NCBI RefSeq assembly: GCF_004010195.1
Contig: NC_057723.1
Span: 79,699,243 to 79,740,018 of the forward strand
Reading direction: 5' to 3'
Origin: Chiloscyllium plagiosum
Taxonomy: Eukaryota
DNA: 40,776 nt
Shown here: positions 1,787 through 40,166 of the stretch, piece by piece
Numbering within the stretch: position 1 is the stretch's first letter
Layout of the letters: every line of letters begins with the position of its first letter
Translations under genes and position numbers: made by a program
Notes under the pieces: generated by a model
The model's input: the letters and a program-made list of their open reading frames with translations, nothing else
Databases searched by the model: none
What the model was told of the DNA's origin: nothing

Positions 1787-1868
1787 GTAAGTTTGGTTGT
1801 TCAGGGAAGCAGGTCTTTCTTTCTGTGTACCTGTCAGTTTTTTGAAGAAGATTGTAAGTTGTATAATA

Positions 1869-1955
1869 TGAAGAAGGGCATGTGCCCGAAACGTCGAATC
1901 TTCTGTTCCCTAGATGCTGCCTGACCTGCTGTGCTGTTCCAGCAATAAAGTTTCA
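1869..1955 (+). mobile_element. Penelope-like terminal-repeat stub (family B)
   Basis: TGAAGAAGGGCATGTGCCCGAAACGTCGA...GATGCTGCCTGACCTGCTGTG matches the end of the Penelope element at ~9335-9415. Confidence 0.7.
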
Positions 1956-8022: not shown

Positions 8023-8042
8023 ACTGCCATTCCTAAATGTCA

Positions 8043-17767: not shown

Positions 17768-19322
17768 TTAGAGTCATAGAGATGACCAGCATGGAAACAG
17801 ACCCTTCAGTCCAACTCATCCATGCCGACCAGTTATCCCAACCTGATCTAGTCCCACCTGCCAGCACCCGGCTTGTATCACTCCAAACCCTTTCTATTCA
17901 TATACCCATCCAAATGCCTCTAAAATGTTGCAATTGTCCCAGACTCCACCACTTCCTCTGGCAGCTCATTCCATACGTGTACCACCCTCTGTGTGAAAAA
18001 GTTGCCCCTTAGGTCCCTTTTATATCTTTCGTCTCATCCTAAACCAATGCCCTCTAGTTCTGGACTCACCCAACCCAGGAAAAAGACTTTGTCTATTTAT
18101 CCTATCCATGCCCGTCAGCCTCCAACTCTCCAGGGAAAACAACCTCAGCCTGTTCAGCCTCTCCCTGGAGCTCAAATCCTCCAACCCTGGCAACATCCTT
18201 GTAAATGTTTTCTGAACTCTGTCAAGTTTCACAACATCTTTCCGATAGGAAGGAGACCAAAATTGCATGCAATATACCAACAGTGGCCTATACAATGTCC
18301 TATACAGCCACAATATGACCTCCCAACTCCTGTACTCAATACTTAGGATAGTGAAGAAGGCTTTCCAATCTACCTGTGACTCCACTTTCAAGGAGCTATG
18401 AACCTATATTCCAAGGTCTCTTTGTTCAGCAATGCCCCCTGGGACCTTACCATTAAGTGTATAAGTCCTGCTAAGATTTGCTTTCCCAAAATGCAGCACC
18501 TCTCATTTATCAGAATTAAATTCCAACTGCCACTTCTCAGCCCATTGGCCCATCTGATCCAGATCCTGTTGTAATTTGAGGTAACCCTTTTCGCTGTCCA
18601 CTACACCTCCAATTTTGGTGTCATCTGCAAACTTATTAACCCTACCTCTTAAGCTCACATCCAAATCATTTATATAAATGACAAAAAATAGAGTACCCAG
18701 CATCGATCCTTGTGGCACTCCACTGGTCACAGGCCTCCAGTCTGAAAACAACCGTCCACCACTACCCTCTGTCTTCTACCTTTGAGCCAGTTCTGTATCC
18801 AAATGGCTAGTTCTCCCTGTATTCCGTGAGACCTAACCAGTCTCCCATGGGGAACCTTGTCAAACGCCTTACTGAAGTCCATATAGATCACATCTACGCT
18901 CTGCCCTCATCAATCTTTGTTACTTCTTCAAAAAACTCAATCAAGTTTGTGAGACATGATTTCCCACGCACAAAGCCATGTTGACTATCCCTAATCAGTC
19001 CTTGCCTTTGCAAATACATGTACATCCTGTCCCTCAGGATTCCCTCCAACAACTTGCCCACCACCGACATCAGGCTCACTGGTCTATAATTCCCTGACTT
19101 GTCTTTACCACCCTTCTTAAACAGTGGGACCACGTTAGCCAACCTCCAATCTTCTGGCACCTCACCTGTGACTATCGATGGCACAAATACCTCAGCAGGA
19201 GGCCCAGCAATCACTACCCTAGCTTCCCAAAGAGTTCTCGGGTACACCTGATCAGGTCTTGGGGATTTATCTACCTTTATGCATTTCAAGACATTCAGCA
19301 CTTCCTCCTCTGTAATGTGGAC
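17768..19322 (-). mobile_element. CR1 (HER1-like) LINE, 5'-truncated
   Basis: KSPRPD..YPR; VPEDWRLANVVPLFKKG; NYRPVSL; QHGF; GVPQGSMLG; FADDTK; LDRVQKTFTRM. Confidence 0.92.
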
Positions 19323-24143: not shown

Positions 24144-24222
24144 GCAGCAAGTGTTCTGTTTTGATTTGCCATTCCTTATAGTTTTCTGTAATTCATTGAT
24201 CTCTTTGACTGCTTCTGCACAA
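24144..24222 (-). CDS. Candidate cytoplasmic exon of the IgSF receptor (79 nt)
   Basis: ttccacaacag| acceptor and TGC|gtgagt donor. Open in phase 2 (CAEAVKEINELQKTIRNGKSKQNTCC); gives LCRSSQRDQ* in phase 0 and VVQKQSKRSMNYRKL* in phase 1. Confidence 0.4.
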
Positions 24223-24670
24223 CTGTTGTGGAACAATGCAAAGTGGAACATTAAATGAGAAACAAGGCAGGTACAGTCTGTAATCACAATGAGCTGGGTG
24301 AGCAGAATTCTGCATGGAGGGATGAGACAAGGAATTCATACAGAAAGGTGTACAATTTGCAACTCAGAAGAAATAGGCCATTCACTGATTATATTTTAAT
24401 GTAATGAAGAATGCAAAAATATATCCATGCCTTAAAAATGCATAGTTTTTAAAATGACAGCATTGAATGACATGAGGGGCTAAATGGTCTACTCTTTGTG
24501 TGCACCTTTGTTTCAACATAATAACAATATGCCAAGAAATCAAACATTTTTGTAATTCCCAAATATCTCCAAGGTATAATTCCAGGCAAAGTCTCCATCC
24601 TTTGCTGTTCCCTTGTTGGTTTTGCTGAAATAAAAGAAAGATCTTGAGAAGGTAAACCCACAAAACTAAC

Positions 24671-24698
24671 ATGAAGATCTTCAGGCAGCTGCTCCGCA
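24671..24698 (-). CDS. Candidate cytoplasmic micro-exon (28 nt): (D)AEQLPEDLH
   Basis: T-rich tract ...tttcaaacattaag| and CAT|gttagt; the phase 2 start matches the end of the 25579-25618 exon. Confidence 0.4.
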
Positions 24699-25098
24699 CT
24701 TAATGTTTGAAATAAAAACAAGACAAAATGCTGGCAATGCAAAACAGATCAGCATTCACCAAGTCACTGACCTTCCTGATTTTGGCATATATTAAAATCC
24801 TGGGGCTTCCACTTTAATGGAATTGTCTGCTCACCGACACCAGATGGAAGGCAAGGGTTCAAGAAGGCAGTTCATTACCACCTTTCCAAGGGTAAGGAAG
24901 CAGAGGTAAGAAGTGCTGACCTAGCAGGCAATGCCCACACCGTGTGAATGAATAAGAAGAGAATTGTGACTCCTTATCCTTAAAATTATAAATCTCCTCG
25001 TGGGGTTTAAATAGCAAACTGCAAATTAATTGGTGAAAACTTGATCAGATATTATATCAAGTTGTTTTGAAGTCTGTACAAGAATTGCATCAATGATA

Positions 25099-25430
25099 AT
25101 TTAGATTAGATTCCCTACAGTATGGAAACAGGACCTCCGGCCCAACAACTCCACACTGACCATTCCTTATAGGAGTAATCCACCCAGACCCATTCCCTAA
25201 CCTTTATTTACCCCTGACTAATGCACCTAACACTACAGGCCATTTAGCCTGGCCAATTCACCTGACCTGCACATCTTTGGATTGTGGGAGGAAACTGGAG
25301 CACCCGGAGGAAACCCACGCAATCACAGGGAGAACATACAAACCCCACACAGACAGACAGTCACCCGAGGTGGGAATTGAACCCGGGTCCCTAGCGCTGT
25401 GAGGCAGCAGTGCTAACCACTGAGCCACCC
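25099..25430 (-). mobile_element. HE1-type SINE
   Basis: Same family as 702-1013. Confidence 0.85.
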
Positions 25431-25578
25431 ACTTTCACTGGATATGGAAAAGACTTGATAAAATGTAAATCAGTCTCCAAAACTCAGCAAAATTATGTGA
25501 CGCAGAATCACCTCCCCTGTGCTCAAAGCATATGATTTTTGTACAGATACCTTTAATTAGGTGTTTTCGAATACTGAC

Positions 25579-25618
25579 TCATGTCTGGTGATCGGGCTCA
25601 GCATTTCAATGACGTTTG
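25579..25618 (-). CDS. Candidate first cytoplasmic exon (40 nt): (A)NVIEMLSPITRH(D)
   Basis: ttttcaatttcttgatgcag| acceptor and GA|gtcagt donor; open in phase 1 as required after the TM exon. Confidence 0.5.
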
Positions 25619-25889
25619 CTGCATCAAGAAATTGAAAACATTTGCTTTACATCAAAGTTTCTTTAGTCTCATTTAGTATGTATCGTTCAAAAATGTGTAT
25701 TGATGTCACTGTCTTCTCAATAACACCTGCCCACTATCATAAGGTCAGAAATAGGGGAGGTTTGCCGTTGATTCAACAATGTTCAGCACCATCCATGACT
25801 TCTCAGATACAGAGACAAAAAAAAAGCTGCAGATGCTGCCTGGCTTGCTGTGTTCTCCCAGCTTCCTGCCTATTTTGGATTGCAGCAGC

Positions 25890-26212
25890 AGGAGCCTGGG
25901 AGACCACAGCAAGCCGGGCAGCATCAGGAGGCTGGGGAACACAACAAGCCGGGCAGCATCAGGAGGCTGGGAGACCACAGCAAGCCGGGCAGCATCAGGA
26001 GGCGGGGGGATCACAACAAGCCGGGCAGCATCAGGAGGCGGGGGGAACACAACAAGCCGGGCAGCATCAGGAGGCTGGGAGACCACAGCAAGCCGGGCAG
26101 CATCAGGAGGCGGGGGGAACACAACAAGCCGGGCAGCATCAGGAGGCTGGGGGATCACAACAAGCCGGGCAGCATCAGGAGGCTGGGAGACCACAGCAAG
26201 CCGGGCAGCATC
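25890..26212. repeat. Minisatellite, 9 units of 36 bp (one of 35 bp), inside a Penelope family B stub (~25815-26350)
   Basis: Unit AGGAGGCTGGGAGACCACAGCAAGCCGGGCAGCATC. Unit ends at 25925, 25960, 25996, 26032, 26068, 26104, 26140, 26176 and 26212. Confidence 0.95.
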
Positions 26213-26900
26213 AGGAGGTGCCCTGAAAAGGGCTACACAGCTCCTTCCTGATGAAGTGCTTATGCTGATTCTCCTGCTCCTCTGATGCTGCCTGACCTGC
26301 TGCGCTTTTCCAGCACCACACTTGACTCTGATCTCCAGCATCTGCAGTCCTCCAATAAGTTCTCCTTATTTATCGATCAAGCCAGTTTAATCTTCCACAA
26401 CTTAATTAAGTGACTTGGCATTGTATTTTGTTTTATAATGCTGTCTAAAGCATCTTATGATGTTTTATTTTGTCATAAGCATCGTAAAATAGATCTTTGT
26501 GGCACTGGTTTTATTGGTGGATGATCGTGGTAACCAGTCCTGACTCTCCAATTTTGTATATCCTTCAAGTTTCCTTTTAAACATCCTTTTAATCTGTATC
26601 CATCTCTCTTATTGGCAGTGCCTTACAAATCCTCACAACCCATTGCATAAAATAAATGTCCTGTTCAGGTTTACCGCTGGCTCTTCTGCTTATCTTAAAT
26701 CTATGCTATCTCCTTCTTGACCTTGCAGTAATTGAAAATAGTTCCTCGTTCTTTACTCTCCCACCCCTTGTGATTTTAAATAGCTTTACCAAATCTCCCC
26801 TTAGCATTCTTTGCTGTTAGGGGAACAAGATGGGGTAATACCTGTACTAAACAGTAGTCCCCGTTCAACTGTGCATAGAGTGCGATTAAACCAGTCTTAC

Positions 26901-27032
26901 CAGTCTCTGTGCTGGAGGAAGAAGTGGTTATCTTGTAGGTGATAGTAACAGCAGCAATAATTAAAAGCAAGCCACCGACAACAGTCACAATGCGCAGAGG
27001 AGTCATTATCCCTGGAGTTCCACTGGAAATCC
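26901..27032 (-). CDS. IgSF receptor exon 6: stalk and transmembrane (G)ISSGTPGIMTPLRIVTVVGGLLLIIAAVTITYKITTSSSSTET
   Basis: aaaaacag| acceptor and G|gtaaga donor, 132 nt, phase 1-1. Hydrophobic stretch of about 20 aa between R and K. Confidence 0.85.
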
Positions 27033-27453
27033 CTGTTTTTAATCCAAGGCGATAATAGAACTTTATTGAGTGGGGATGGAGTTATAGTCAGAATTAAACA
27101 ATTTCCTGATTCAGGAGCAAGATGTGAGTTTTAAATGGAGTGACACAACTTAATCCTTTTGCTTCCTGTAAACCAATGTGAGTATGTAAAAACCAGTCCC
27201 ATCCACAGCTAATCAGTAGCTAATGCATTACATGTCTCTACTGTTTTCACAGAACAACCCCTCAAAACAAAGCCTTCTGCAGAAAGTAAAACTTTGGAGG
27301 ATTGTTTCCAGGAGTCCAAGTTAATAATTGACTGTTGGTTCGCCTGTTCCTTTTGTAACTGCAACCCTCCCCTGTCACTCAGACACCTCCCCCTCCCATT
27401 CACACCTGTACACACACAATACACCACATTCTCACAACTGATGTGGGTCTTAC

Positions 27454-27774
27454 CCAGATACTTAGTGACCGCTCTCTGTAGCGTCTGTACCAGGGACACA
27501 TGGTTCACTTCACACCAGTAAGTATGGTTGCTCTCCCACTCTGCTGTCGGCACAGTCAGCTGGCTCAGTGTCCGGTAGGTGCCTGTACTGCCCAAAGCCA
27601 CTGCAAACTGGGTCACTCCCATATCCACTGGACCATTCTCATCTCTCCAAGTCACAGAAATATCGGCAGGGTAAAAATCTGACACCAAACAGGCCACTGT
27701 GACATTTTGCCCGGCAGAGACAGCATCGGATCGAGGAGAGATCAGCTGGATCACAGGCTCCTGAATGTAACCAT
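27454..27774 (-). CDS. IgSF receptor exon 5: third C1-set domain
   Basis: EPVIQLISP...VTVACLVSDFYPADISVTW...YRTLSQLTVPTAEWESNHTYWCEVNHVSL; donor G|gtaaga. The acceptor is the unusual gctgGAG|. 321 nt, phase 1-1. Confidence 0.88.
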
Positions 27775-28396
27775 CTCCAGCAAAGACAGGAACAGATTGT
27801 TAGATAAACAAATATTTACAACTTTATCATAGTCACCAAGTCAAATGTATTTCAGAAAAGTTAAGTGAAGGCAGAGAGCAGTGACTTTCTTGGTTTACAG
27901 CATCAATAATGTAACACTCCAAGCTCGAAGCAGAAAGTGGGATGTTAATGTTGGGATGCATTCTGGCATAGCCCTGATTACTCATACATCAGGTGAAGCA
28001 CTTGATGATTCATAAATGGATAAACTATAAGGAAATGCCAGTCAGACTGCAATGATCGAGCTCTTTGGTGAATAATAAACTACAAGCACAAGGCAGAATG
28101 GAGGGAGGTGGGAACCTATCCATTCTCTTCATAGTAGATGCAATTGATTCTGTTCCTGACTTCCCCTAATCTATAGCATAAGCAAGAGTTGAGAGTGTGG
28201 CACTGGAAAAGCACAAGCAGGCAGGCAGAATCTGAGGAGCAGGAGAATCATCGTTTTGGGTAGGAGCCCTTCATCAGGAAGCCCTTCATAAGCAAGCTGA
28301 GCAATCATACGCATAGCTTCCAGGGAGAGAGACTATAAAGGCATCTTAGTCCCACTTCTGATGAAAAGTAGTGAACTCAGCACTGATCTTTATAAT

Positions 28397-29179
28397 CAGA
28401 CTCAACCACCATTTTATACTCTTCCACATAACCTCAAATAAACACAAAATCAATGAGTTAAAAAAATCCAATTCATGGGTATGATATTGAAATCCTCCCA
28501 CTTGGTCCATTCCTGGGGTTCTACAGAACCTGGTGCTGGGGCCCTTGCTGGTTGGGATGTACATTATTGATTTGGTTCTAAAGATAGGAGGTCCATTCAA
28601 GAAGTTTGCAGATGACATGGAATGAAATTTGATTGGGTGATAGATAGTGACGAGGAGAGTTGTAAATTTCAGGAGCGTATCAACAGACTGGTCAGGTGGA
28701 CAGAGAAGCAGCAAATGGAATGTAACCTGGAAACATGTGAGTTTGGGAACTGCTACCAAGGCAAGGAATGGGGAGACCCTGTAAAGTACTGAATATTATT
28801 GGGATTTTGATGTGCATATCCGGACACTGCTGAAGATAGGAAAACATGTATCCCACATGCTTCCTTATCTACGTGTCTACTGGCTGAGGCATACAAGTGC
28901 AGGGAGCTTATGCTGGAATGAAAACAGAAGTGTTGGAGAAACTCAGCTGGTCTGGAAAGATCAGTGACGAGAGAAACAGTTAATATTTAAAGTGTAAAGA
29001 CTCCTCTTCACCTGATGTATCCCAACCAGCAAGGGCCCCAGCACTAGGTTCTGTGGAACCCCAGGTATGGACCAAGTGGGAGGATTTCAATATCATACCC
29101 ATGAGTTGGATTATTTTACTCATTGATCTTGTGTTTATTTGAGGTTATGTGAAAAAGTATAAATGGTGGTTGGGTCTGA
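28397..29179. repeat. Inverted duplication with ~165-bp arms (28397-28564 / 29015-29179)
   Basis: For example CATGGGTATGATATTGAAATCCTCCCACTTGGTCCAT versus ATGGACCAAGTGGGAGGATTTCAATATCATACCCATG. Confidence 0.9.
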
Positions 29180-29180
29180 C

Positions 29181-29970
29181 CCTACAAGGATCAGTGCTGG
29201 GTTCAGTACTTTTCATCATTTACATAAATGATTTGGATGAGAGCATAAGAGGTACAGTTAGCAAGTTTGTAGATGACACCAAAATTGGAGGTGTAGTGGA
29301 CAGCGAAGAAGGTTCCCTCAGATTACGGCGGTATCTTGATCAAATGGGCTGAGATGTGGCAGATGGAGTTTAATTCAGATAAATGTGAGGTGCTGCATTT
29401 TGGGAAAGCAAACCTTAGCAGGACTTATACACTTAATGGTAAGGTCCGAGGGAGTGTTGCTGAACAAAGAGACCTTGGAGTGCAGGTTCATAGCTCCTTG
29501 AAAGTAGAGTTGCAGGTAGATAGGACAGTGAAGAAGGTGTTTGGTATGCTTTCCTTTATTGGTTAGAGTATTGAGTACAGGAATTGGGAGGTCATGTTGC
29601 AACTGTACAGGATATTGGTTAGGCCACTTTTGGAATGTTGCATGCATTTGTGGTCTCCTTCCTATCGGAAAGATATTGTGAAACTTGAAAGGGTTCAGAA
29701 ACGATTTACAATGATATGGCCCAGGTTGGAGGATTTGAGCTACAGGGAGAGGTTGAATAGGCTGGGGCTGTTTTCTCTGGAACCTGAGGGGAGACCTTAT
29801 AGAGGTTTATAAAATCATGAGGGCATGGATAGGATAAATAGACAAAGTCTCTTCACTGGGGTGGGGGAGTCCAGACAGGTGGGGCTAGATTGGGTTGGGA
29901 TATCTGGTCAGCATGGATGGGTTGGGCTGAAGGGTCTGTTTCCGTGCTGTACATCTCTATGACTCTATGA
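29181..29970 (+). mobile_element. CR1 LINE 3' fragment, internally deleted
   Basis: QGSVLG; FVDDTK; WQMEFNSDKCEVLHFG; LERVQKRFT; ATGACTCT tail. Further older + strand CR1 pieces continue to ~30700. Confidence 0.9.
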
Positions 29971-30981
29971 TTGGGGTACAGTGAGCAGATCTGGTCACTG
30001 CTTTGTAGGAAGGATATGATTGTGCAGAGGAAACTCATCAGGATGTTGCCTGGAGCATCTGAGCTGTGAGGAATGATTGGATGCACTGAGGTTGGTATCC
30101 CTGGAGCAGTGAGGCCAGACAGGAGGCTAATAGAGGTGTGTAAGATTATATGGGGTGTAGATGGGCTGGAGAGAAAGGCACTTTTTCCATGAGTAACATG
30201 GTCAATAACCTGCATAAAGAACCTACCTCTGCTGTCTGCTCAAGAAATCTTTATGCAAAGAGTTGCCTGTGGTGGTGGTGGTGGAGGCAGAGTCATTAGA
30301 GACATTTAAGCGACTGCTGGACATGCACATGGAGAGCAGTCAATTGAGGAGTGCGTAGGTTAGGTTATTTTATTTTACATTAGGACTAATCCTCGGCACA
30401 ACATCGTGGGCTGAAGGGCCTGTTCTCTAGCCAGGGAGTATAGGTTTAAGGTGAGAGGCAGCAGACTAAGAAAGGGGTTTTGGAGGATTATGGGAGTCCT
30501 GAAGTCACTGCTGGGAAGGATGCTAGAGTCAGACATTTTCTTGATATTTCAGCAGTATTTAGAAATTTACTTGCACTGCCATAACCCGCAGGACCATCAG
30601 CTAAAAGCTGGGAAATGGATTAATCTGGTCAGATCTTTGTCAACCAGAATAGGAATGATGGGCTGATTGGCCTCCTCTTGCTGCAATTGTCTCTGAGTTT
30701 CTGGATGACCAAAGTGCACTAGTTGAAAGCAACTGAGTAACTAATCATAAACGACTTATTTTTAAAAATACAGGTATACCTCTGTTAATACAATGACCCC
30801 TCATAAAAGAGTTTGAAGTTGTAAAATAGACTATTAGCAATCTCTGTCTCTACTGTTTTAATATTTATTTACCTGCATTTCTTTATTAATTTTAGCAAAG
30901 TGTGGAATATGTAGCCTATAGGGACAACAAATGTTATAACTGGGCAGAGGGGTAACAGGAGTCCAGTCATGTTAGGAGACA

Positions 30982-32223
30982 TAAGCAGTGGTTAGCACTG
31001 GTGCCAGGGACCTGGGTTCGATTCCAGCCTCGGGTGATTGTGTAGAGTTTGCACGTTCTCCCCGTGTCTGCGTGGGTTTCCTCCGGGTGCTCCGGTTTCC
31101 TCCCACAGTCCAAAGATGTGCAGGTTTGGGTGGATTGGCCACGCTGAAGTGTTGAGAGTGTGGTGCTGGAAATGCACAGCAGGTCAGGCAGCATCCGAGG
31201 AGCCCTTCATCAAAAATGAGGCTGGGAGCCTAGGGGGTGGTGAGATAAATGGGAGGAGAGTAGGGCTGGGGACAAGGTAGCTGAGAGTGCAATAGGTGGA
31301 TGGAAGTGGGGTTAAAGGTGATAGGGTGGAGAGGAGGCTGGAGCAGATGGGTGGGAAGGAAGATTGGTAGGTCATGAGGGTGGTGCCGAGTGGGAAGGTT
31401 GGATCTGGGATAAGGTGGGAGGAGGGGACATGAGGAAACTGGTGAAATCCACATTGATGCCTTGGGGTTGAAGTGTTCCGAGGCAGAAGATGAGGCGTTC
31501 TTCCTCCAGGCGGGTGGTGAGGGAGCGGCGGTGGAGGAGGCCCAAGACCTCCATGTCCTCGGCAGAGTGGGAGGGGGAGTTGAAATGTTGGGCCACAGGG
31601 CGGTGTGGTTGATTGATGTGGGTGTCCCGGAGATGTTCCCTAAAGCACTCTACTAGGAGGCGCCCAGTCTCCCCAATGTAGAGGAGACTGCATCGGGAGC
31701 AACGGAAACAATAAATGATATTAGTGGATGTGCAAGTAAAACTCTGGATGTGGAAGGCTCCTTTGGGGCCTCGGATGGAGGTGAGGGAGGAGGTGTGGGC
31801 GCAGGTTTTGCAATTCCTGTGGTGGCAGGGGAAGATGCCGGGAGGGGAAGGTGGGTTGGTGTGGGGCGTGGACCTGATGAGGAAGTCATGGAAGGAATGG
31901 TGTTTGTGGAAAGAGGATAGGATGGGGAGAGAAATATATCTCTGGTAGTGGGGTCCATTTGTAGGTGGCGGAAATGGGGGAGGATGATGCGATGTACACG
32001 AAGGTTGGTGGGGTGGAAGGTGAGGACCGGGGGGAGTTCTGTCCTTGTTGTGTTTAGGCGGGGTGCTCAAGTATCCCATAGTGTTCAGGGATATGGAGGC
32101 TGGGTGGTTTAGCCATGGGGAATACAGGGTTACAGGCATAGGGGGTGAGTCTGGGTGGGATGCTGTTCAGAGGGGCAGTTTGACTTGGGCAGAATGGCCT
32201 GCTTCCACAGTGTAGGGATTCTA
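30982..32223 (+). mobile_element. HE1-type SINE split in two (30982-31150 and 32065-32223) by a Penelope insertion
   Basis: The SINE stops at GGCCACGCT and resumes at ...CCCATAGTG; junction repeats GCTGAAGT (31143-31150) and GCTCAAGT (32065-32072). Confidence 0.75.
31151..32064 (-). mobile_element. Penelope-like element family B, 3' fragment (GIY-YIG)
   Basis: SFTCTSTNIIYCFRCSRCSLLYIGETGRLL..CFREH...VAQHFN...EERLIFCLGTLQPQGINVDF. Confidence 0.9.
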
Positions 32224-32552
32224 CGAGGAGAAACAGATACAAAATCGATAGTTAATAGAGCAAATAGCGCCAGACAGAGCCAGGTAAGGGCAAGATAAAG
32301 TAGGCCTGCTGGGGTGAGTAAAAGGTGTTTATCTGAGACTGCAGACATCTGCTTTTCATCTGATTATCATAGGAACATAAAATCATACAATACAGAGGGG
32401 GCCCTTTCTGCATGTATTAATTATGCACAAACAAGATTGCAATTCGAGTAATGAACGGTGTATACAACAGGATGTGTTTTAAAAATGTGTTCTCTTGTAT
32501 TTGACAGAATTCTGTTCAAGTGAGTCTAGAGTACGCTCTCCCTGTGGGTGCA

Positions 32553-32678
32553 TGATGTGGAGGTGCCAGTGTTGGACTGGGGTGGACGAGATCAGAAGTC
32601 ACATGACACCAGGTTATAGTCCGACAGATTTATTTGAAATCACAAACTTTTTGAGCACTGCCCCTTCATCAGGTGAAG
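32553..32678. mobile_element. Family C stub (single arm)
   Basis: ATGTGGAGGTGCCAGTGTTGGACTGGG...CCCTTCATCAGGTG. Confidence 0.7.
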
Positions 32679-32927
32679 TCACAACAAGAATTCAACAGTC
32701 ATGACTTTGGTCTCCTCAAGGATATTTCATGCTTGAGTAGATGCAGGGATTTTAGAACATGATATCAATTTGAATGGAATATAAGGTTGTAGTAGGAAGG
32801 AGGAATGAGAATCTTTAGAAGAAACTTCACAGGATTCAAGTTAGACTTTAGGTAGTTTTAAGACACATTTAATATTCCAGGATATCTTGAGAAAACATTT
32901 AAAGACAATAAGATTCCATGTCCTTAC

Positions 32928-33242
32928 CATTTATTTTCCTCAAGCTGTGCCTCACAGGAGTTGACAACAAAACATGTTGAATTTGACAAGTGAACAAAGA
33001 TCCACATTCCCACTCATGGACAGCAACTGTGAACTCACTTCTGGGACTGTAACTCCCATTTGTATTTAAAGCTGGTGGAAGTGTTTTCGAACTAAAAGTT
33101 GTATTACAGTTATTAACTAGCCAGCCAAACACAATGTCTTTGGGATAAAATCCAACCACCAGACAAACAATTGTTGCAGTTTTCTTCACACCAACCTCTT
33201 CAGAAGTTGGAGGAAGCACATAGACAGATGGTGGGATCAAAT
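32928..33242 (-). CDS. IgSF receptor exon 4: second C1-set domain
   Basis: PPSVYVLPPTSEEV...ATIVCLVVGFYPKDIVFGW...YSPRSEFTV...EWECGSLFTCQIQH; cgtttag| and G|gtaagg; 315 nt, phase 1-1. Confidence 0.92.
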
Positions 33243-33858
33243 CTAAACGAGTAGAAGTGGTTATTGGTCAGAACAGTACTCTTCCAAAGTCAATTCAGAA
33301 GCAACAGAGTACTTTGCATTTAGATATCAAAACTTCAGGACATCCCAAAACACGTTAGAGCCACTGAATGCAGTTGCTGTAACTTTGCAAAAAAAAGTGG
33401 GATTTAATTTGCACTCAGTAAAATCCCATAAATAGCAATGAAATGAATGTCAAATGGAATATTAAGAAAATAAAACTTATTTGTTTTAATCTTATTCATA
33501 TATCAAAACAATATTTTCTCCAAGGTAGCGTGGTGTAATAATGGTTCCAGGCTAAGGAAGGCCCAGGGTCCATCTAACATGGTAGTTTACAGAGTTCCTA
33601 TAATTAATTTTGAATAACATTGAATCCCATAAATTGACAAGACTCTTCCCAGTTCTTGCCTAAACATGTGAAGGTTTCTTGTTCAAGCATGCATGTCAAA
33701 AATCTATTCCATATTCTTCCACCCTGATGGAAGAAGACATGGCCTTTTTTATCCAGCCTCTAACTGATGCTTTGATTCTGTATGTGACTGCAATGCTTAC
33801 TCTGATCATAACCTTTCATAATTTCATTCGTAACAAGGAGTGAAGTTTCACAGCTGTT

Positions 33859-34079
33859 GAGGGTGGTACATGTGTGAAATGAACTGGCAGAGGAAGTGGT
33901 GGAGGCTGGTACAATTACAGCATTTAAAAGGCATCTGGATGGGTACATGAATAGGAAGGGGTTAGACGGATATGGGCCAAATGCTGACAAATGGGGCTAG
34001 ATTAATTTAGGATATCTGGTCAGTATGGATGAGTTGAACCAAAAGGTCTGTTTCTGTGCTGCGTAACTCTATGACTCTA
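33859..34079 (+). mobile_element. CR1 3'-end fragment
   Basis: Matches 37645-37870 and the reverse complement of 17768-17990. Confidence 0.85.
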
Positions 34080-34226
34080 GGGTATTATGAATGGAATCAA
34101 AATATAGTTATGGCGCAAGTAGATCATGAGAGTTAATAAACTCATTTTTGAGCTGTCACAGAAGAAGTAATTCCCTTTAGTTGTATTTTCTACTTTTTAA
34201 AGTGTCCCACATAAAAGTAACACTGT

Positions 34227-34542
34227 GGGTGACACGGTGGCTCAGTGGTTAGCACTGCTGCCTCACAGCACCAGGATCCCAAGTTCGATTCCTGCCCTGG
34301 GTGACTGTTGGAGTTGCACGTTCTCCCTGTGTCTGTGTGGGTGTCCTCTGGGTACTCGGGTTTCCCCCCACAATCCAAAGATGTGCAGGTCAGGTGAATT
34401 GGCCATGCTAAATTGTCCATAATGATAGGTGCATTAGTCAGGGGTAAATGTAGGTGAATTGATCTGGGTGGATTGCTCTTCGGAGGGTCGGTGTGAACTT
34501 AATGGGCCAAAGGGTCTGTTTCCACACTGTAGGGAATCTAAT
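34227..34542 (+). mobile_element. HE1-type SINE
   Basis: GGTGGCTCAGTGGTTAGCACTGCTGCCTCACAG...CCACACTGTAGGGAATCTAAT. Confidence 0.85.
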
Positions 34543-35519
34543 TAAAAAAAACTGTCCTTACAGGATCAAATTCTTCTGATGTCAGAAATGGGTACACAAA
34601 CGGTGATGCTACACAGGTTAGGATGAAGGTTTTAAGCTCAAAGCAAAGATCTAGTGGTCGTTTTAAAATAGTAACAGAGTTTGGAGAGTAGTCACACAGG
34701 AACTGTCTCCACTTGTTTGAATGAACTAAACTAGAGCCACAAATATAAGACAGTCCTGCATAAATCCACAAGGAAACTTATGGTATGAAACCTCTTTATC
34801 CATACCATGATGAGATTATGAAACTCCTTGCCACAGGGTACAGCTGATGTGAGGTGAGACACCAGCTGATGAGAGAGCATTGAGTAGAAGGTTACCTTGA
34901 CAGACAAGGAGGTTCGAGTGGAACATTAATAGTGACGTGGACTAGTTGGATTGAATGGGCCATTTCTGTGCTCTGTATTCTTTGTAGTTCTACACATGAA
35001 AAATCAATTGTTGCACAGTCCACTTGCACAGCATTATTGGTTCAAAGCTGCCAGGAATATCAGCACATTTCAGGTTGAATCTGTCGAACCAGTGAACAAC
35101 TGGAGGAATTGAAACATAGGACAGTTATACGCCAAACCTGCTCCCATGTTGAAATTGTGAAATTCTACAGCTTTAAGCAGGATCTTCAAATTTGCCACAT
35201 TGCTGAGATACATAAGTACAAGTGGGCTTGTTTTAAAAGTATGTTAAAAATTTACAAAAAAGCTCAGGACTGTATGTCAATCAAACAATTGAGTTGCATC
35301 AGGCTAACTTTAATGGTATTTTCATTTGGAAGAAAGAACACAAGCTACTAAAAATTCTTAATTTTCCTCATAGACCCACTTTCAGCAAAATTTCACAAAG
35401 TTAGCTCTTGTAAATGTAGACGAAGGAAAATAAAAATATCATTGTGATTTTACAAAATGATTTCAAAGGAGATGGAACACAGCCTAACCAGTGTAATCCC
35501 AAATCCCTGTTGAACTCAA

Positions 35520-35850
35520 TTTCCCAACTGTGCCCAAAGCAGGGACAACACATCTATCCTGGGACAGGCTAAGCAAAGACATGCCAGAGAATCCCTGGAG
35601 GCCTGGCACTCCAACCACAACGCCATAAACAAACACACAGATCTAGATGCCATCTATCAACCCCTCAGAAAACAAACAGGAAATGACATCACCACAATCC
35701 CCAGGAACCCCATCCAGGAGAAAGATATAAATAGAAAGCAGGAGACAACAGCTTCACTTCACTTGGAGGTCGCCACTGATGATGTTACCTAGCCAGGTAA
35801 TGAAACGTCTGGATATCAAACCTACAGCTCAGCGAGCAAACCTACACCCC
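35520..35850 (+). mobile_element. Penelope family A 3' fragment with terminal repeat
   Basis: Homologous to 9975-10262. Confidence 0.8.
35773..35812 (+). ncRNA. Minimal type I hammerhead ribozyme motif (Penelope-associated)
   Basis: CCA-CTGATGA-T-GTTACCT(AGCC)AGGTAAT-GAAAC-GTC-TGG: intact core, 7-bp stem II, CCA/TGG stem I, GUC cleavage triplet, palindromic ACGT in place of stem III. Confidence 0.65.
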
Positions 35851-36307
35851 AAAGCAGGGAGTTTACCTGTCCCAGGAGTCTGACTCTCTAGATATTCGGA
35901 CCCATACATGAAGGAACTTGACCCTGGGATAATTCCCCTTTTCTGTTTTACCTCTAGCAAAGCTAAAGGAGTTATTGGAGATACGTTTGGACCCAAGAGC
36001 AGGGACAGCAAACATATCTATCAAAGGTAGAGCTAGGTGCAACAGCTACAGGAGGGCAAGAGGAGAAACCAGGGTGGTCCTGAGAGCAGATGTAGGAGAG
36101 AATGAGATTTTGGGAGACTTAGTGTGTAGCACAAGGGGGTAAAAATTATTTGTGAGTAGCTGGTGAGATTTTTTTAAGGCTTAAGGTTGATTCTGTGAAC
36201 TGAATTACTAGTCTAATAGACAGGAACATAGCCAGGACTTCTAAAGCACATCCTGTTTCGATTAGATTAGATCAGGAATTCTATTTCTCATGTTCTGGAT
36301 GTAGCCA

Positions 36308-36612
36308 CGATGTGGAGGTGCCAATGTTGGATGGGGATGGACAAAGTCTGAAGTCACATGACACCAGGTTATAGTCAAACAGAAACAAAAACAGAGCTTT
36401 CTGGAAAAGCTCAGAAGATCTGGCAGCACCTGTGGAGCGAAATTGGAGTTAATGTTTTGGGTCTGGTGACCCTTCCAACAGATTTATTTGAAACCACAAG
36501 CTTTCAAAGCGCTGCCCCTTCATCAGGTGCAGAAATAAAGCAGCAGCACTCCAAAAGCTTGTGGTTTCAAATAAACCTGTTGGACTGTAACGTGGGGTCT
36601 TGTGACTTCTCA
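36308..36612. mobile_element. Fold-back mini-element family C with an internal ~95-bp insert
   Basis: Arms TTTATTTGAAACCACAAGCTTT / AAAGCTTGTGGTTTCAAATAAA; unrelated insert at ~36378-36472. Confidence 0.7.
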
Positions 36613-36724
36613 CCATGTTCTGGATGGATTGACAGCTGTGGAGGAGCTTGAACAACGTTGAATCTACGTGCCTACCTCCTGGAGGTAGTACAATGACAGC
36701 CTGAGGGAATGTAGGAATCTTCAT

Positions 36725-37870
36725 CAGATGGGCCAATGGGCTGAGGAGTGGCAGATGGAGTTCAATTTAGATCAATGTAAGGTGCTGCATTTTGGAAAAG
36801 CAAATCAGGGCATGACTTATACACTTAATGGTAAGATCCTAGAGAGTGTTGCTGAACAAAGAGACCTTGGAGTGCAGGTTCATAGTTCCTTGAAAGTAGA
36901 GTCGCAGTAGGTAGGTTAGTGAAGAAGGCGTTTGGTATGCTTTCCTTTATTGGTCAGTGCATTGAGTCTAGGAGTTGGGAGGTCATGTTGTGACTGTACA
37001 GGATTTTTATTAGGTCATTATTGGAATACTGTATGCAATTCTAGTCTCCCTCCTACAGAAAGGATATTGTGAAATTTGAAAGGGTTCAGAAAAACTTTGC
37101 AAGGACATGGCCAGGGTTGGAGGATTTGAGCTATAGGGAGAGGCTGAATAGGCTGGGGCTGTTTTTCTGGAGTGTCAGAGGCTGAGGGGTGTCTTACAGA
37201 GGTTTGTAAAATCATGAGGGTCATGGATAGGATAAATAGACAAAGTCTTTTCCCTGGGGTGGGGGAGTCCAGAACTAGAGGGCATAGGTTTAGGGTGAGA
37301 GGGTAAAGATATAAAAGAGACCTAAGATCAGATTACTTACAGTGTGGAAACAGGCCCTTCGGGTCCACACCGATCCTCCAAAGAGCAACCCACCCAGACC
37401 CATTCCCCTACATTTATCCCTTCACTTTACACTACGGGCAATTCACCCTGACATGCACATTTTTTTGGACTGTGGGAAGAAACCGGAGCACCCGGAGGAA
37501 ACCCACACTGACACGGGGAGAGTGTGCAAACTCCATACAGACCATTGCCGGGGGTGGGAATTGAACCCGGGTCTCTAGCACTATGAGGCAGCAGTGCTAA
37601 CCACTGAGCCACCGTGCCACCTACTAAGGGGCAACCTTTTCACACAGAGGGTGGTGCATGTATGGAATGAGCTGCTAAAGGAGGTAGTGGAGGCTGGTAC
37701 AATTGCAACATTTAAAAGGCATCTGAGTGGGTATATGAACAGGAAGGATTTGGAGGGATATGGGCCAAATGCTGGCAAATGTGACTAGATTAATTTAGGA
37801 TACCTGGTCAACATAGATGTGTTGGACTGAAGGGTCTGTTTCATTGCTGTACAGCTCTGTGACTGTATGA
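36725..37870 (+). mobile_element. CR1 3' fragment interrupted by a SINE
   Basis: MGQWAEEWQMEFNLDQCKVLHFG...; the CR1 resumes at ~37624, with CTAAG on both sides of the SINE. Confidence 0.9.
37327..37619 (-). mobile_element. HE1-type SINE nested in CR1
   Basis: Same family as 702-1013. Confidence 0.85.
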
Positions 37871-38017
37871 CACAGGTCACCAGGCAGGTACAGAACGCTT
37901 CTATGAGGGGGAAGTCTCCCTGGCTGACTAGAATTCAGTTCCAAATACTTAATTCAAAAGTAGTTACAAGAAATTAATATATAAGATAGTGTGAATGAGG
38001 CTGTTAATTGAACTTAC

Positions 38018-38335
38018 CATCTTTGCTGATTACTTTTCTGATGGGGGAAGACAGTGTTTTATGTGAAACCAGGCAGGTGTAGTGAAGACCATGAAGCCAG
38101 TGGTGTGTTGGCACTGTCAGCTCACTGATCATGGTGTAGCTGTCTTCTGATTCCATCAGTATCCCAGAGTTTGAAACCCCTGAGGACAGCTGGGTGCTGC
38201 CAACGTACCAAGACACCGAGACAGTGTCTGGATAGAAATCACTTACCACACAGACCAGTTTGCAGTCTGCCTGGAGAGAGACTTCCTCAGGCGATGGCTG
38301 AAGGAGCTCAACGGAAGGTAGTCTGGGTGTGACAG
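38018..38335 (-). CDS. IgSF receptor exon 3: first C1-set domain
   Basis: LPSVELLQPSPEEV...CKLVCVVSDFYPDTVSVSW...YTMISELTVPTHHW...YTCLVSHKTL; tctcaacccag| and G|gtaagt; 318 nt, phase 1-1. Confidence 0.92.
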
Positions 38336-39169
38336 CTGGGTTGAGAAAATAAGGAACTGTTAGTTTAATTTCCTTCGAGTGAATCTGTCGGGATTTAGCC
38401 AGTTTTACACTGTGTTTTACCGCCACACTTTCTAACCTCACTTCAGCACCTCCTCAACATGAAGTTCACTTTTGTACTTTCCAAATCACTTTCTAAGCTT
38501 TTTTTTAAAATTACTTGTCATCAACTTATTCAGAGATGTTATTGCACAAGTTGGATGAAGGAAGCTGGCCTCCTGGTCTAGAGGTGAAGACATTGCCACT
38601 TCACCTCCCCAGCTCTTCAGCTTTCGCTTGTATGTTGCAGATCGGTTTGATGCTCTATGACCCACTGGTGACTCCTGGCTCAGTTCGCCCACTAGCTAAC
38701 ATTACACAAGCATGCTTCGCATTCTGCAGCTAATACCACGGCCTCAGCGCTCGGTAAAGTCCCACCCAGGTGCCTGGGTTAGAAGGCCAATGCTGCACCC
38801 ACATTGAATGAGAGGGACAGGATGCAGCAAATACTGCACTCTAGAAATGAGCCCCTCTGAGTCCCCACTGCCAAGCCAGCTCCCTGACTGATGGCTATTC
38901 CACACAGAGGAGGCAAGAAAACTGTTTGTTGGAGCCAATCAATTTCAGCCTCCCCCCTGCAATGAGGCTCATTCTGGACTGCTTGGAGGAGAGTGCCTGT
39001 GGTATTTCCACCTCCTCCAGCCTGGGAGAGAGAGGTTGCTGATCTCTCCTGGGCTTCATAATCATAGAAACCCCACAGTGTGGAATCAGAACATTCAGCC
39101 CAATGAGTCCCATACTGACTCTCCAAAGAGCATCTCACCCAATCTCTGTAATTCTGCATTTCCCGTGGC

Positions 39170-39375
39170 TAACCCGGACACTTATGGGGCAATTTAGCAT
39201 GGCCAATCCACTCTAACCTGCACATCTTTGGACTGTGGGAAGAAACCAGAGCACACCCGTGCAGACACAGGGAGAATGTGCAAACTCCACGCAGACAGTT
39301 GCCCGAGGCTGGAATCGAACCCAGGTCCCTGATGCTGTGAGGCTGCAGTGGTAACCACTGAGCCACCATGCCACC
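39170..39375 (-). mobile_element. HE1-type SINE, 3'-truncated
   Basis: The head is the same as in the other copies. Confidence 0.8.
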
Positions 39376-39465
39376 CCAACTTGTGCATTAACTCTGCTTT
39401 CTCTTTGCACAGAGCTTTTCCAGTGATCTCTGTTTGTGTTGCTGAATTCTGAGGTTGACACTGAC

Positions 39466-39831
39466 CTGGCTTCACATTAAGGATCACCGCACAGCCACAC
39501 CATTCACTCGTCTTGACCACAGTGTCCTTACTCTGACAGTAAAACCTCCTGGAATCCTCCTTTTTGACCGTCTCGATGATTAAAGTGAGATCACTGTCAT
39601 TGGTGGCAGAGAACCGGGGCTCGAAACCGGGATGCTGGACAATGTCGGTCGATCCTGGGCTCATGGACAAGATCCATTTGATGTTGGTGGTGCCCACTGG
39701 CACGTAACCCCAGGTTAGCACGTGGTCATCCTGCTGCCTGCTGCTGAGACACCCCAGGCTCACTGTTTCACCCTCGCGGACATCGTGTACCGCCTGCAGA
39801 ATGATCAAGTTGGCGTTGGAGAGCACTGCAT
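39466..39831 (-). CDS. IgSF receptor exon 2: V-set domain including the G (J-like) strand
   Basis: VREGETVSLGC...LTWGY...PRFS...LTLIIETVKKEDSRRFYC-QSKDTVVKTSE-WCGCAVILNVKP; CT-rich tract cttgttcag| and CAG|gtcagt; 366 nt, phase 1-1. Confidence 0.92.
39518..39546 (+). promoter_or_regulatory. RSS-like motif: CACAGTG, 13-bp spacer, AGTAAAACC
   Basis: Perfect heptamer at 39518-39524; 39538-39546 matches ACAAAAACC at 7/9. Function not shown. Confidence 0.35.
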
Positions 39832-40120
39832 CTGAACAAGGGAGAGAGAGAGAGAAAAACAGCAAGTCAGGGCAGCTTGAAATATGTTACAAATGTTACG
39901 TTGGAGAGGCACAGCCAGTCAGGCAGCATCGAGGAGGAGAGGAATCAACATTTTGAGCATAAGCTCTTCATCAGAAATGCAAAGGGCTGAGGATAGAGAC
40001 AGAATAGACAGAGAATTTGGAAACCTGGTGAGCTTTTTCAGCAATCTCTGTTTATGTTTCTGATTTCCAGTGTCCACAGATCTTTTGGTTTTCGTTTTGA
40101 GAGAGAGCTTAGCTCCTTAC

Positions 40121-40166
40121 CTATCTGCCAGGCCACCAGCAACAAACTCCAACAGCGCCTCTGCAT
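40121..40166 (-). CDS. IgSF receptor exon 1: signal peptide MQRRCWSLLLVAWQI(D), continuing into AVLS
   Basis: agaATG (purine at -3), 46 nt, TAG|gtaagg, phase 1. Basic-then-hydrophobic split leader with a 289-nt intron. Too short for the ORF track. Confidence 0.85.

What the first reader, a model, noticed from the sequence alone, without database searches (positions are those of the whole stretch)
24144..40166. Intact non-rearranging V-C1-C1-C1-TM receptor gene shaped like an antibody heavy chain
Seen: six exons (46+366+318+315+321+132 nt) splice in phase 1 into an open 499-codon leader-V-C1-C1-C1-TM protein. The G strand lies in the V exon, and no separate D/J segments were recognised between V and C1. 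Known: C1-set domains are largely restricted to Ig, TCR, MHC/B2M, tapasin and SIRP/B7H6-like proteins. These three look like Ig constant domains (PSVxxLxPsxEE, CLVxxFYP, EW, YxCxVxH). SIRPs have V-C1-C1 and other non-rearranging VJ-C1 genes usually have one C1. Shark germline-joined IgH genes keep canonical VH (WVRQ, WGxG) and the IgH TM motif, and both are absent here. Inference: a poorly characterised or undescribed innate-type receptor, either a relic of the pre-RAG antigen-receptor precursor or an old derivative of Ig C exons.
Basis: partly seen in the sequence, partly recalled or inferred. Interest (0 to 1): 0.88.

Follow-up and report, generated by a model that had tools for sequence, protein, structure and literature searches.

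The report
Short membrane-bound shark UrIg-family receptor gene
This is an intact shark gene for a germline-encoded, antibody-shaped membrane receptor that belongs to the recently described UrIg/UrIg2 family, but it sits in a compact side branch of that family that the papers I could read do not describe.

Summary
On the minus strand lie a 46-nt leader, a 366-nt single-exon V, three C1-set exons (318, 315, 321 nt) and a 132-nt TM exon. All have AG/GT splice sites and all are in phase 1. A likely seventh exon adds a cytoplasmic tail and a stop codon, giving 545 aa.

The family is already described. The best solved match of the V exon is nurse-shark UrIg2 (9dmx, E 1.4e-15), the three C exons are colinear with its C1, C2 and C3, and both G-strand cysteines are kept. 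Flajnik et al. 2025 (PMC12227049) propose UrIg2 as a relative of the V gene invaded by RAG.

This gene is not the published UrIg2 orthologue.
- It has only three C exons.
- Its TM exon is not detectably related to the long forms.
- Its V lies outside the published clade.
- A V+C1 tree of public proteins puts its 96%-identical Chiloscyllium counterpart in a separate clade, with placement among published UrIg2 rejected (AU p=9e-5).

Whale shark and catsharks carry both lineages.

The scan noted a similar neighbour gene just beyond this window. RNA evidence could not be obtained, and the papers' supplements were closed.

The parts
40121..40166 (-). Leader exon 1 (46 nt, ATG at 40166-40164): the first part of a split leader, ending in phase 1
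   Evidence: Read; donor GT checked; identical to residues 1-15 of P0001
39466..39831 (-). Single-exon V(J) domain (366 nt) with the G strand included
   Evidence: Pfam V-set E 4.1e-07; best PDB match is UrIg2 9dmx_A at E 1.4e-15, next match 3.2e-10; 96% identical to P0001
39491..39499 (-). Codons for the Cys-Gly-Cys of the G strand (WCGCAVILNV)
   Evidence: Both Cys align with FCSCGTTLKV of 9dmx. The paper says two non-canonical disulfides link the G strands of the UrIg2 V homodimer. The second Cys is invariant and the first nearly invariant in alignment A1
38018..38335 (-). C1 exon (318 nt), C1-set domain of positional class C1
   Evidence: Pfam C1-set E 3.2e-21; best stretch on 9dmx is 133-229; groups with S. 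torazame scyTo_0006168 domain 1 at 99/97
32928..33242 (-). C2 exon (315 nt), C1-set domain of positional class C2
   Evidence: Pfam C1-set E 6.9e-19; best stretch on 9dmx is 241-336; lies in the C2 class, 96/95
27454..27774 (-). C3 exon (321 nt), membrane-proximal C1-set domain and the most conserved part of the gene
   Evidence: Pfam C1-set E 4e-22; 66.4 bits to 9dmx 365-442; 77-78% identical to the last C domain of the Mustelus and Scyliorhinus short proteins
26901..27032 (-). Connecting peptide and transmembrane exon (132 nt): ISSGTPGIMTPLRIVTVVGGLLLIIAAVTITYKITTSSSSTET
   Evidence: Translation; acceptor AG at 27034-27033 and donor GT read; 97% identical to P0001 and 71% to P0004 over the TM; helix 470-491 in the model of P0001
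24046..24185 (-). Probable last coding exon: 46-residue cytoplasmic tail plus stop (TGA 24048-24046). Rests on a model only
   Evidence: tblastn of the P0001 tail gives 89% over 47 residues, E 1.5e-26; translation. The acceptor has a poor pyrimidine tract. A better-looking acceptor (AG 24224-24223) would give a 15-residue tail instead (read). No RNA evidence

Best explanation
This is an intact gene for a type I membrane protein of the elasmobranch UrIg/UrIg2 family of non-rearranging, antibody-like genes. Its architecture is split leader, one germline V(J) exon, three C1-set exons, a TM exon and a short cytoplasmic exon.

It is not the orthologue of the published long UrIg2 (9 to 11 C domains). 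It belongs to a separate compact lineage that is sister to published UrIg2. That lineage occurs as a tandem pair of genes. Type B is V-C1-C2-C3-TM-tail, which is this gene, C. punctatum chiPu_0010575 and S. torazame scyTo_0006168. Type A is V-C1-C3-TM, which is the neighbour beyond the window, chiPu_0010574, scyTo_0006167 and the Mustelus and S. canicula 'kappa light chain-like' models.

Inferred mechanism, by analogy with the UrIg2 crystal structure. Two chains pair into a disulfide-linked homodimer through the two G-strand cysteines. C1 pairs with C1, and C2-C3 form an Fc-like stem on the membrane. The invariant V pair binds a ligand that is still unknown. The V evolves fast (43-52% identity between shark orders) while C3 and the TM are kept (77-78% and 64-72%). 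That pattern fits a ligand-driven tip on a conserved stalk or partner-binding module.

Shown here: the exon anatomy, the family relationship and the separate lineage. Inferred: dimerisation, surface expression, the tail exon and the function.
For: Anatomy.

Family. The V exon's best solved relative is UrIg2 9dmx_A (E 1.4e-15 against 3.2e-10 for the next), with WGYVP and the C-x-C G strand aligned. The C exons are colinear with 9dmx C1, C2 and C3. In the C-domain tree of 42 rows they fall in the three positional classes shared with long UrIg2 and the UrIg-like P0007 (C2 96/95, C3 96/92, C1 83/81). The AlphaFold model of P0001 finds 9dmx_A first (E 1.4e-37, 34% identity) ahead of full IgG heavy chains (2.8e-30, 24%).

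Separate lineage.
- Only 3 C1-like exons lie in the window.
- Per-exon identity to long UrIg2 is 35-43%, against 43-78% to the short proteins.
- The TM exon matches only the short proteins.
- The published-type V clade is starred and excludes the window V. It has 7 rows, including the paper's accessions XP_048449493.1, XP_051865846.1 and XP_038644097.1, with support 100/99.
- In the V+C1 tree of 10 public proteins the short clade has 99/97, P0001 with scyTo_0006168 has 100/98, and holding P0001 with published UrIg2 is rejected (AU p=9.3e-05).
- Whale shark (P0005 and P0009) and Scyliorhinus (P0048/P0004 and P0063/P0017) each hold both lineages.

Tandem pair. The locus tags are consecutive and lie on the same contigs in two species, and scan note s1-885758 reports a second such gene beside this window.
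Against: - Co-splicing, the tail exon and expression therefore rest on gene models of other species.
- On the V exon alone the deep branching is unresolved. Holding the window V with the published clade is not rejected (AU p=0.133), and the short forms as one clade get only 47/84.
- The roots are long IgW branches. In one search the outgroup was not one clade, and IgW domain 1 fell among the C3 class.
- That P0007 is UrIg is inferred only from its architecture and its single extra cysteine.
Its Fig. 1 may already show them.
Confidence: 0.8

Rival explanations
1. It is simply the species' orthologue of the published UrIg2. [quoted passage not shown]
For: 9dmx is the closest solved protein. On the V exon alone a sister position to the published clade is not rejected (p=0.133). 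The paper reports large differences in C-domain number between species.
Against: The paper reports an 11-C UrIg2 in epaulette shark and a UrIg2 transcript in gray bamboo shark. By my recalled taxonomy these belong to the same family as Chiloscyllium, the source of the nearest public protein P0001. Whale shark and catsharks hold both lineages. The AU test on V+C1 rejects P0001 among published UrIg2 (p=9.3e-05). The TM exon is unrelated to the long-form TMs at E<1e-5.
Confidence: 0.07
2. It is an unexpressed or decaying duplicate, a pseudogene in the making, that merely still looks intact.
For: No RNA run is on record as a holder. The tail-exon acceptor is weak. Amino-acid differences from P0001 run at 4-11% per exon, which could be near neutral. 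The introns are full of retroelement fragments.
Against: All seven exons are open with canonical splice sites. C3 is 77-78% identical across two shark orders. Both type B orthologues are also open. Eleven small holder runs of about 80-290 million letters hold 0.29-0.39 of the words of a stretch that is 0.32 exon. That is what transcripts would give, though it is only suggestive.
Confidence: 0.08
3. It is a germline-joined derivative of a rearranging Ig or TCR gene, with V(D)J fused by RAG in the germ line, rather than a never-split gene.
For: An RSS-like nonamer, 13-nt spacer and heptamer lie in the CDR3-equivalent. Germline-joined Ig genes are known in cartilaginous fish (mentioned).
Against: The FR2 and J motifs of Ig/TCR are missing; the V has WGYVP and WCGC. 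The V groups with the UrIg family and away from IgW VH, 100/100. The C exons fall in the UrIg-family classes. Joining removes recombination signals rather than leaving one. The residues that encode the heptamer are not kept in the other short-lineage V domains.
Confidence: 0.03

Closest known systems
UrIg2 (Flajnik et al. 2025, Sci Adv, PMC12227049; crystal structure 9dmx of nurse shark V-C1-C2-C3)
   Same: Split leader; single-exon non-rearranging VJ; WGYVP in place of WVRQ; two G-strand cysteines; C1, C2 and C3 domain classes in the same order; TM and cytoplasmic end. It is the closest solved sequence and fold.
   Different: This gene has three C domains, not 9 to 11, and no C2/C3 repeat units. 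Its V is outside the published clade at 35-39% identity, while the paper gives 50-60% among UrIg2 species. Its TM exon shows no detectable likeness to long-form TMs or to the IgM TM. It appears to be one of a tandem pair.
UrIg / tsIgH (Flajnik et al. 2023; Kondo et al. 2023, PMC10331284)
   Same: V plus exactly three C1-type domains, each in one exon, non-rearranging. The UrIg-like protein P0007 is about as distant from this gene (41-44% per domain) as long UrIg2 is.
   Different: UrIg is described as secreted only, with one extra cysteine between V and C1, and MHC-linked. In C. punctatum it is GCC18650, whereas this gene's counterpart is GCC32115. This gene has a TM exon and two G-strand cysteines.
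Membrane immunoglobulin heavy chain (IgG-like V-CH1-CH2-CH3-TM)
   Same: Same domain count and order. Full IgG heavy chains are the next-best fold matches. C exons are in phase 1, and exon 1 is a 46-nt split leader.
   Different: There are no V/D/J segments and no functional signal pair. The WVRQ and WGxG motifs are absent. There is no Ig octamer upstream of the leader; the only two in the window lie elsewhere. The TM does not match the IgM B-cell-receptor chains in the PDB. No light chain is implied.
SIRP family and other VJ-C1 innate receptors (NKp30/NCR3, PRARP)
   Same: A germline V with the J-like strand in one exon, followed by C1-set domain(s) and a TM.
   Different: No SIRP chain appears among the 60 best rows shown for any of the four Ig exons. 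The window gene's tail has no ITIM or ITAM. The domain classes are those of the UrIg family.

Membership tests
UrIg/UrIg2 family in the wide sense (non-rearranging elasmobranch Ig-like genes) | [quoted passage not shown] | tested here: met
   46-nt leader exon plus a 366-nt V exon holding the G strand; no further V- or J-like piece found
UrIg/UrIg2 family in the wide sense (non-rearranging elasmobranch Ig-like genes) | V followed by C1-type domains, one exon each, falling in the positional classes C1, C2 and C3 | tested here: met
   Pfam C1-set three times; colinear with 9dmx; class branches C2 96/95, C3 96/92, C1 83/81
UrIg/UrIg2 family in the wide sense (non-rearranging elasmobranch Ig-like genes) | V domain closest to UrIg-family V domains rather than to Ig/TCR V | tested here: met
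   9dmx_A at E 1.4e-15 against 3.2e-10 for the best antibody; the UrIg-family V group is split from IgW VH at 100/100. No IgM, IgL or TCR V of sharks was in the tree
UrIg/UrIg2 family in the wide sense (non-rearranging elasmobranch Ig-like genes) | Disulfide-linked homodimer through G-strand cysteine(s) | not testable with these tools
   The C-x-C motif is present and aligned. The disulfides are known only for nurse shark UrIg2
Published UrIg2 orthologue group (Flajnik 2025) | V clusters with the published UrIg2 V domains | tested here: not met
   Outside the starred 7-row clade (100/99). P0001 with published UrIg2 is rejected on V+C1 (AU p=9.3e-05). On V alone a sister position is not rejected (p=0.133)
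Published UrIg2 orthologue group (Flajnik 2025) | In sharks, C2/C3 units repeated (9 C in nurse shark, 11 in epaulette shark) | tested here: not met
   Three C1-like exons in 40.8 kb, and the TM exon lies 421 nt after C3
Published UrIg2 orthologue group (Flajnik 2025) | TM about 50% identical to the IgM TM, with Leu-Leu-Ile-Phe at its centre (paper's statement) | tested here: not met
   The TM reads GGLLLIIAAV. No IgM BCR chain is found at E<=10, and there is no hit to long-form TMs at E<1e-5. The nurse shark TM itself was not available to me
Published UrIg2 orthologue group (Flajnik 2025) | Linked to IgM/IgW/IgNAR/TCR alpha-delta/PSMB5 (the antigen-receptor complex) | not testable with these tools
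The scan notes place Ig/TCR genes on other pieces
Published UrIg2 orthologue group (Flajnik 2025) | Expression highest in gill and liver, not in lymphocytes | not testable with these tools
UrIg (MHC-linked, secreted) | Secreted form only; a single extra cysteine between V and C1; highly conserved V | tested here: not met
   A TM exon is present. There are two G-strand cysteines. The V is only 43-52% identical between orders. The C. punctatum UrIg is a different protein, GCC18650
Germline-joined IgH/IgL genes of cartilaginous fish | Canonical FR2 (WVRQ/WYQQ) and J motif (W/F-G-x-G) | tested here: not met
   The V reads LTWGYVPVG and EWCGCAVILNV

The most novel reading that the evidence does not exclude
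Galeomorph sharks carry a third, undescribed branch of the UrIg family, besides MHC-linked UrIg and the long UrIg2. It is a conserved tandem pair of compact membrane receptors. One of them (this gene) keeps the four-domain V-C1-C2-C3 plan that Flajnik et al. postulate for the UrIg/UrIg2 precursor, here still attached to a TM. Because it is sister to the whole published UrIg2 clade, which includes rays, it would predate the shark-ray split. It would be the closest living model of a membrane-bound, heavy-chain-only, pre-RAG antigen receptor.
Probability: 0.4. Interest if true: 0.72.

Novelty: new member of a known kind. Interest (0 to 1): 0.5.

Why it matters
UrIg and UrIg2 are at present the best candidates for relatives of the V gene that the RAG transposon split. 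A further lineage adds an independent data point for reconstructing that ancestor. This one is compact, membrane-bound, shaped like a minimal heavy chain, and found as a conserved gene pair with a fast-evolving V on a conserved C3/TM stalk. It also gives a much smaller ectodomain for expression and ligand hunting than the ten- to twelve-domain UrIg2. If the supplements of the 2025 paper already list these genes, the finding reduces to a correct re-identification of a known family.

Tried and rejected
- SIRP, tapasin and MHC kinship: not among the 60 best PDB rows shown for any Ig exon.
- UrIg itself: rejected, because of the TM exon, the two cysteines and a different C. punctatum protein.
- IgW or IgM heavy chain: P0055 and P0056, returned by the search with P0012, are IgW with a VH. 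They served only as outgroups.
- Extra decayed C exons in the long introns: none found.
- Ig octamer upstream of the leader: none.
- Hidden D/J segments: heptamers are at chance level.
- A relic of the ITIM-like tail of scyTo_0006168 at about 25530-25625 (minus strand): tblastn E only 0.037, with a stop and Tyr replaced by Phe. Too weak to claim.
- The neighbour ORF at 1541-1924 as a synteny marker: only a weak zf-U1 hit (E 0.0046, below the cut-off) and mixed Atlas leads. Not usable.
- The search for homologous proteins with P0001, whole and V-only, gave few rows (4 and 1). In the whole-protein search only the 8000 candidates sharing most words were scored. Absence of further orthologues is therefore not shown.
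- The UrIg 2023 paper (PMC10530332) is not held. I know it only through citations.

Full report
**What is there.** The gene lies on the minus strand. Reading the sequence and a script check give these exons.

| Exon | Coordinates | Length (nt) |
|---|---|---|
| Leader | 40166-40121 | 46 |
| V | 39831-39466 | 366 |
| C1 | 38335-38018 | 318 |
| C2 | 33242-32928 | 315 |
| C3 | 27774-27454 | 321 |
| TM | 27032-26901 | 132 |

Each exon has an AG acceptor and a GT donor, each junction is in phase 1, and each exon is open (TM exon translated). Pfam calls the V exon V-set (E 4.1e-07) and the three C exons C1-set (3.2e-21, 6.9e-19, 4e-22).

tblastn of each exon against the window finds no further V-like or C1-like exon below E 1e-3, so there are three C exons only. 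The one N run (9269-9275) is far from the gene.

**The end of the gene.** The 1498 nt end in phase 1 without a stop. The public protein P0001 (545 aa) continues after the TM with a 46-residue tail. That tail is encoded at 24185-24046, at 42 of 47 residues and E 1.5e-26, ending in TGA. The exon lengths then sum to 1638 nt, which is 545 codons plus the stop and equals the length of P0001.

This exon rests on a gene model only. Its acceptor has a purine-rich tract. An acceptor 37 nt upstream with a better pyrimidine tract would give a 15-residue tail (read).

**What family.** Against all PDB sequences the V exon's best match is 9dmx_A, 'UrIg2 V-C1-C2-C3' (E 1.4e-15; the next is a single-chain antibody at 3.2e-10). 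The alignment covers the unusual WGYVP(x)G stretch and the G strand, where WCGCAVILNV aligns with FCSCGTTLKV. The C exons match 9dmx at 133-229, 241-336 and 365-442, that is C1, C2 and C3 in order.

I read the abstract and sections 6, 7, 8, 11, 12 (part 1 of 2), 16 and 19 of Flajnik et al. 2025 (PMC12227049). The paper describes UrIg2 as follows.
- It is a non-rearranging gene with a split leader, a single-exon VJ and 9 (nurse shark) or 11 (epaulette shark) C1-type domains plus a TM and cytoplasmic part.
- It is linked to the IgH/TCR alpha-delta complex and is expressed mainly in gill and liver.
- It is a disulfide-linked homodimer whose V domains are joined by two non-canonical disulfides between the G strands.
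- It is proposed as a relative of the V exon invaded by the RAG transposon.

**Closest public proteins.** An exhaustive HMMER search with the V exon gave 47 proteins at E<=1e-3.
- P0001 is 96% identical. It is GCC32115.1, hypothetical protein chiPu_0010575 of Chiloscyllium punctatum, with the same architecture throughout.
- Five more hits (P0002-P0005, P0044) are short relatives from Mustelus asterias, Scyliorhinus torazame, Rhincodon typus and C. punctatum.
- Six hits (P0009, P0010, P0012, P0014, P0017, P0022) are of the long or published type.
- P0007 is a 457-aa V+3C protein from an unnamed Logan assembly.
- The remaining 34 are other V-set proteins without C1 domains like these.

Per-exon identity of the window gene:

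| Compared with | V | C1 | C2 | C3 | TM |
|---|---|---|---|---|---|
| P0001 (C. punctatum) | 96 | 95 | 91 | 89 | 96 |
| scyTo_0006168 (P0004) | 52 | 72 | 66 | not in the model | 72 |
| Mustelus / S. canicula / S. torazame type A proteins | 43-48 | 48-51 | absent | 77-78 | 64-69 |
| Long UrIg2 (P0009, P0012, P0054) | 35-39 | 33-41 | 39-44 | about 40 | no hit at E<1e-5 |

**Is it the published UrIg2?** Three accessions that the paper lists as UrIg2 are in my set. They are XP_048449493.1 (P0009), XP_051865846.1 (P0010) and XP_038644097.1 (P0063, in the 90% cluster of P0017). P0054 is XP_041031359.1, next in number to the paper's white shark accession.

In a V tree of 18 rows these and their kin form a starred clade of 7 rows (100/99) that excludes the window V (one search gave the same with 17 rows). 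On V alone the deeper order is open. A tree holding the window V and P0001 with the published clade is not rejected (AU p=0.133), and all short forms as one clade get only 47/84.

With V+C1 of 10 public proteins, using P0001 as stand-in, the picture is clear.
- Short clade: 99/97.
- P0001 with scyTo_0006168: 100/98.
- Mustelus with the two Scyliorhinus type A proteins: 99/96.
- Published clade: 100/100.
- Holding P0001 with published UrIg2 is rejected (p=9.3e-05).
- Short plus published as sisters against P0007: 94/91, not starred.
- Short plus P0007 as one clade is not rejected (p=0.08).

The C-domain tree had 42 rows; 7 near-identical repeat domains of the long forms were left out. It gives the three positional classes and puts each window domain with the short-lineage domains. 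Its weaknesses are that the IgW outgroup was not one clade and that IgW domain 1, a very long branch, fell inside the C3 class.

Whale shark holds both a published-type V (P0009) and a short-type V (P0005). Scyliorhinus holds both P0063/P0017 and P0048/P0004. The two lineages are therefore paralogues.

All named species with the short type are galeomorph sharks of two orders; those taxonomic assignments are from my own knowledge.

**Tandem pair.** chiPu_0010574 (P0044) and chiPu_0010575 (P0001) share one 1.98-Mb scaffold. scyTo_0006167 (P0051) and scyTo_0006168 (P0004) share one 447-kb contig. Adjacency is inferred from the consecutive tags.

The scan's own unchecked note s1-885758 reports a leader-V(J)-C1-C1-TM gene 8.4 kb beyond this window's end. 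That fits type A. I could not read that DNA.

**Structure.** AlphaFold2 on P0001 with an 11-row family alignment gave mean pLDDT 71 and pTM 0.36, with four Ig domains and a helix at 470-491. Foldseek against the PDB ranks 9dmx_A and 9dmx_B first (E 1.4e-37 and 2.5e-36, 34% and 33% identity). Whole IgG heavy chains follow from 2.8e-30. The TM-scores are low (0.38/0.46), as expected for a flexible string of domains.

**How it probably works (inferred).** By analogy with 9dmx the protein would be a disulfide-linked homodimer, with V-V joined through the kept C-x-C motif, a C1 pair and an Fc-like C2-C3 stem anchored in the membrane.
- The tail of the window gene has no ITIM or ITAM (motif definitions from my own knowledge).
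- Its S. torazame orthologue carries an ITIM-like SVYQNV.
- The Arg at the outer TM edge is Trp in the relatives, so no conserved charged TM residue points to an adaptor.
- The contrast between a fast V and a conserved C3/TM suggests a changing ligand and a fixed partner.
- A TM-skipped isoform is predicted for the S. torazame type A gene (P0052), so soluble forms are possible.

**What I could not do.**
There is therefore no junction or expression evidence.
- The run search found no holder on record as RNA. Eleven small holder runs (about 80-290 million letters) hold 0.29-0.39 of the words of a stretch that is 0.32 exon. That is compatible with transcripts but proves nothing.
- Supplements were closed. 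Table S1 and Figs S1-S2 of the 2025 paper may already list these genes.
- Searches of the held papers for 'UrIg2' found 2 papers. A search for six accession numbers or locus tags of the short proteins found none.

**Verdict.** The kind is known: the UrIg/UrIg2 family. Within that family this is a member of a compact, membrane-bound sister lineage that the main texts I could read do not describe.

Noticed in passing
window 39518-39546 (minus strand), inside the V exon: An RSS-like string GGTTTTACT, a 13-nt spacer and CACTGTG sits in the CDR3-equivalent, followed by 52 nt to the exon end. It is the only match to the nonamer-13-heptamer pattern with up to 2 mismatches in the window (0.06 expected; 6 of 100 shuffles have one). 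The spacer length was chosen after seeing it. The letters are forced in part by the R-F-Y-C and D-T-V-V codons, and DTVV is not kept in the other short-lineage V domains. This is also scan note s1-885950.
   Followed up: partly
window 27209-27453 (minus strand), directly after the C3 donor: Reading through the C3 splice donor stays open for about 81 more codons and is cysteine-rich, with no Pfam match. It could be a secretory tail or chance. RNA is needed to tell.
   Followed up: partly
window 32928-33242 (C2 exon): Compared with C. punctatum P0001, the window's C2 has two extra cysteines (NNC for NNH, and EWEC for EWES). This may be a new intradomain disulfide between loops at the same end of the domain.
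   Followed up: no
window 25882-26218, intron between the TM and tail exons: A 36-nt minisatellite with 9.4 copies and 91% matches. It produces the long repetitive ORFs on both strands listed.
   Followed up: yes
window about 25530-25625 (minus strand): A very weak likeness (tblastn E 0.037) to the ITIM-like cytoplasmic tail of S. torazame scyTo_0006168, with Phe for Tyr and a stop. It may be a decayed ancestral tail exon.
   Followed up: no
window 18894-19301, 21626-22156, 29149-29352 and neighbours: Reverse-transcriptase (RVT_1) fragments of retroelements lie in the introns and downstream. Two long ORFs, 7934-8839 (+) and 31372-32139 (-), resemble each other but match no Pfam family.
   Followed up: partly
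window 1541-1924 (plus strand): An ORF with a weak U1/matrin-type zinc-finger match (E 0.0046, below Pfam's cut-off) and mixed Atlas leads (ZDBF2, matrin-type, AKAP95-like). It may be an exon of a neighbouring gene.
   Followed up: partly
public proteins P0048-P0053 (Scyliorhinus) and P0002 (Mustelus): The type A relatives are annotated 'immunoglobulin kappa light chain-like'. The paper's catshark UrIg2 is annotated 'T cell receptor beta chain MC.7.G5-like', and a white shark UrIg2 piece 'titin-like'. The automatic names hide the family.
   Followed up: yes
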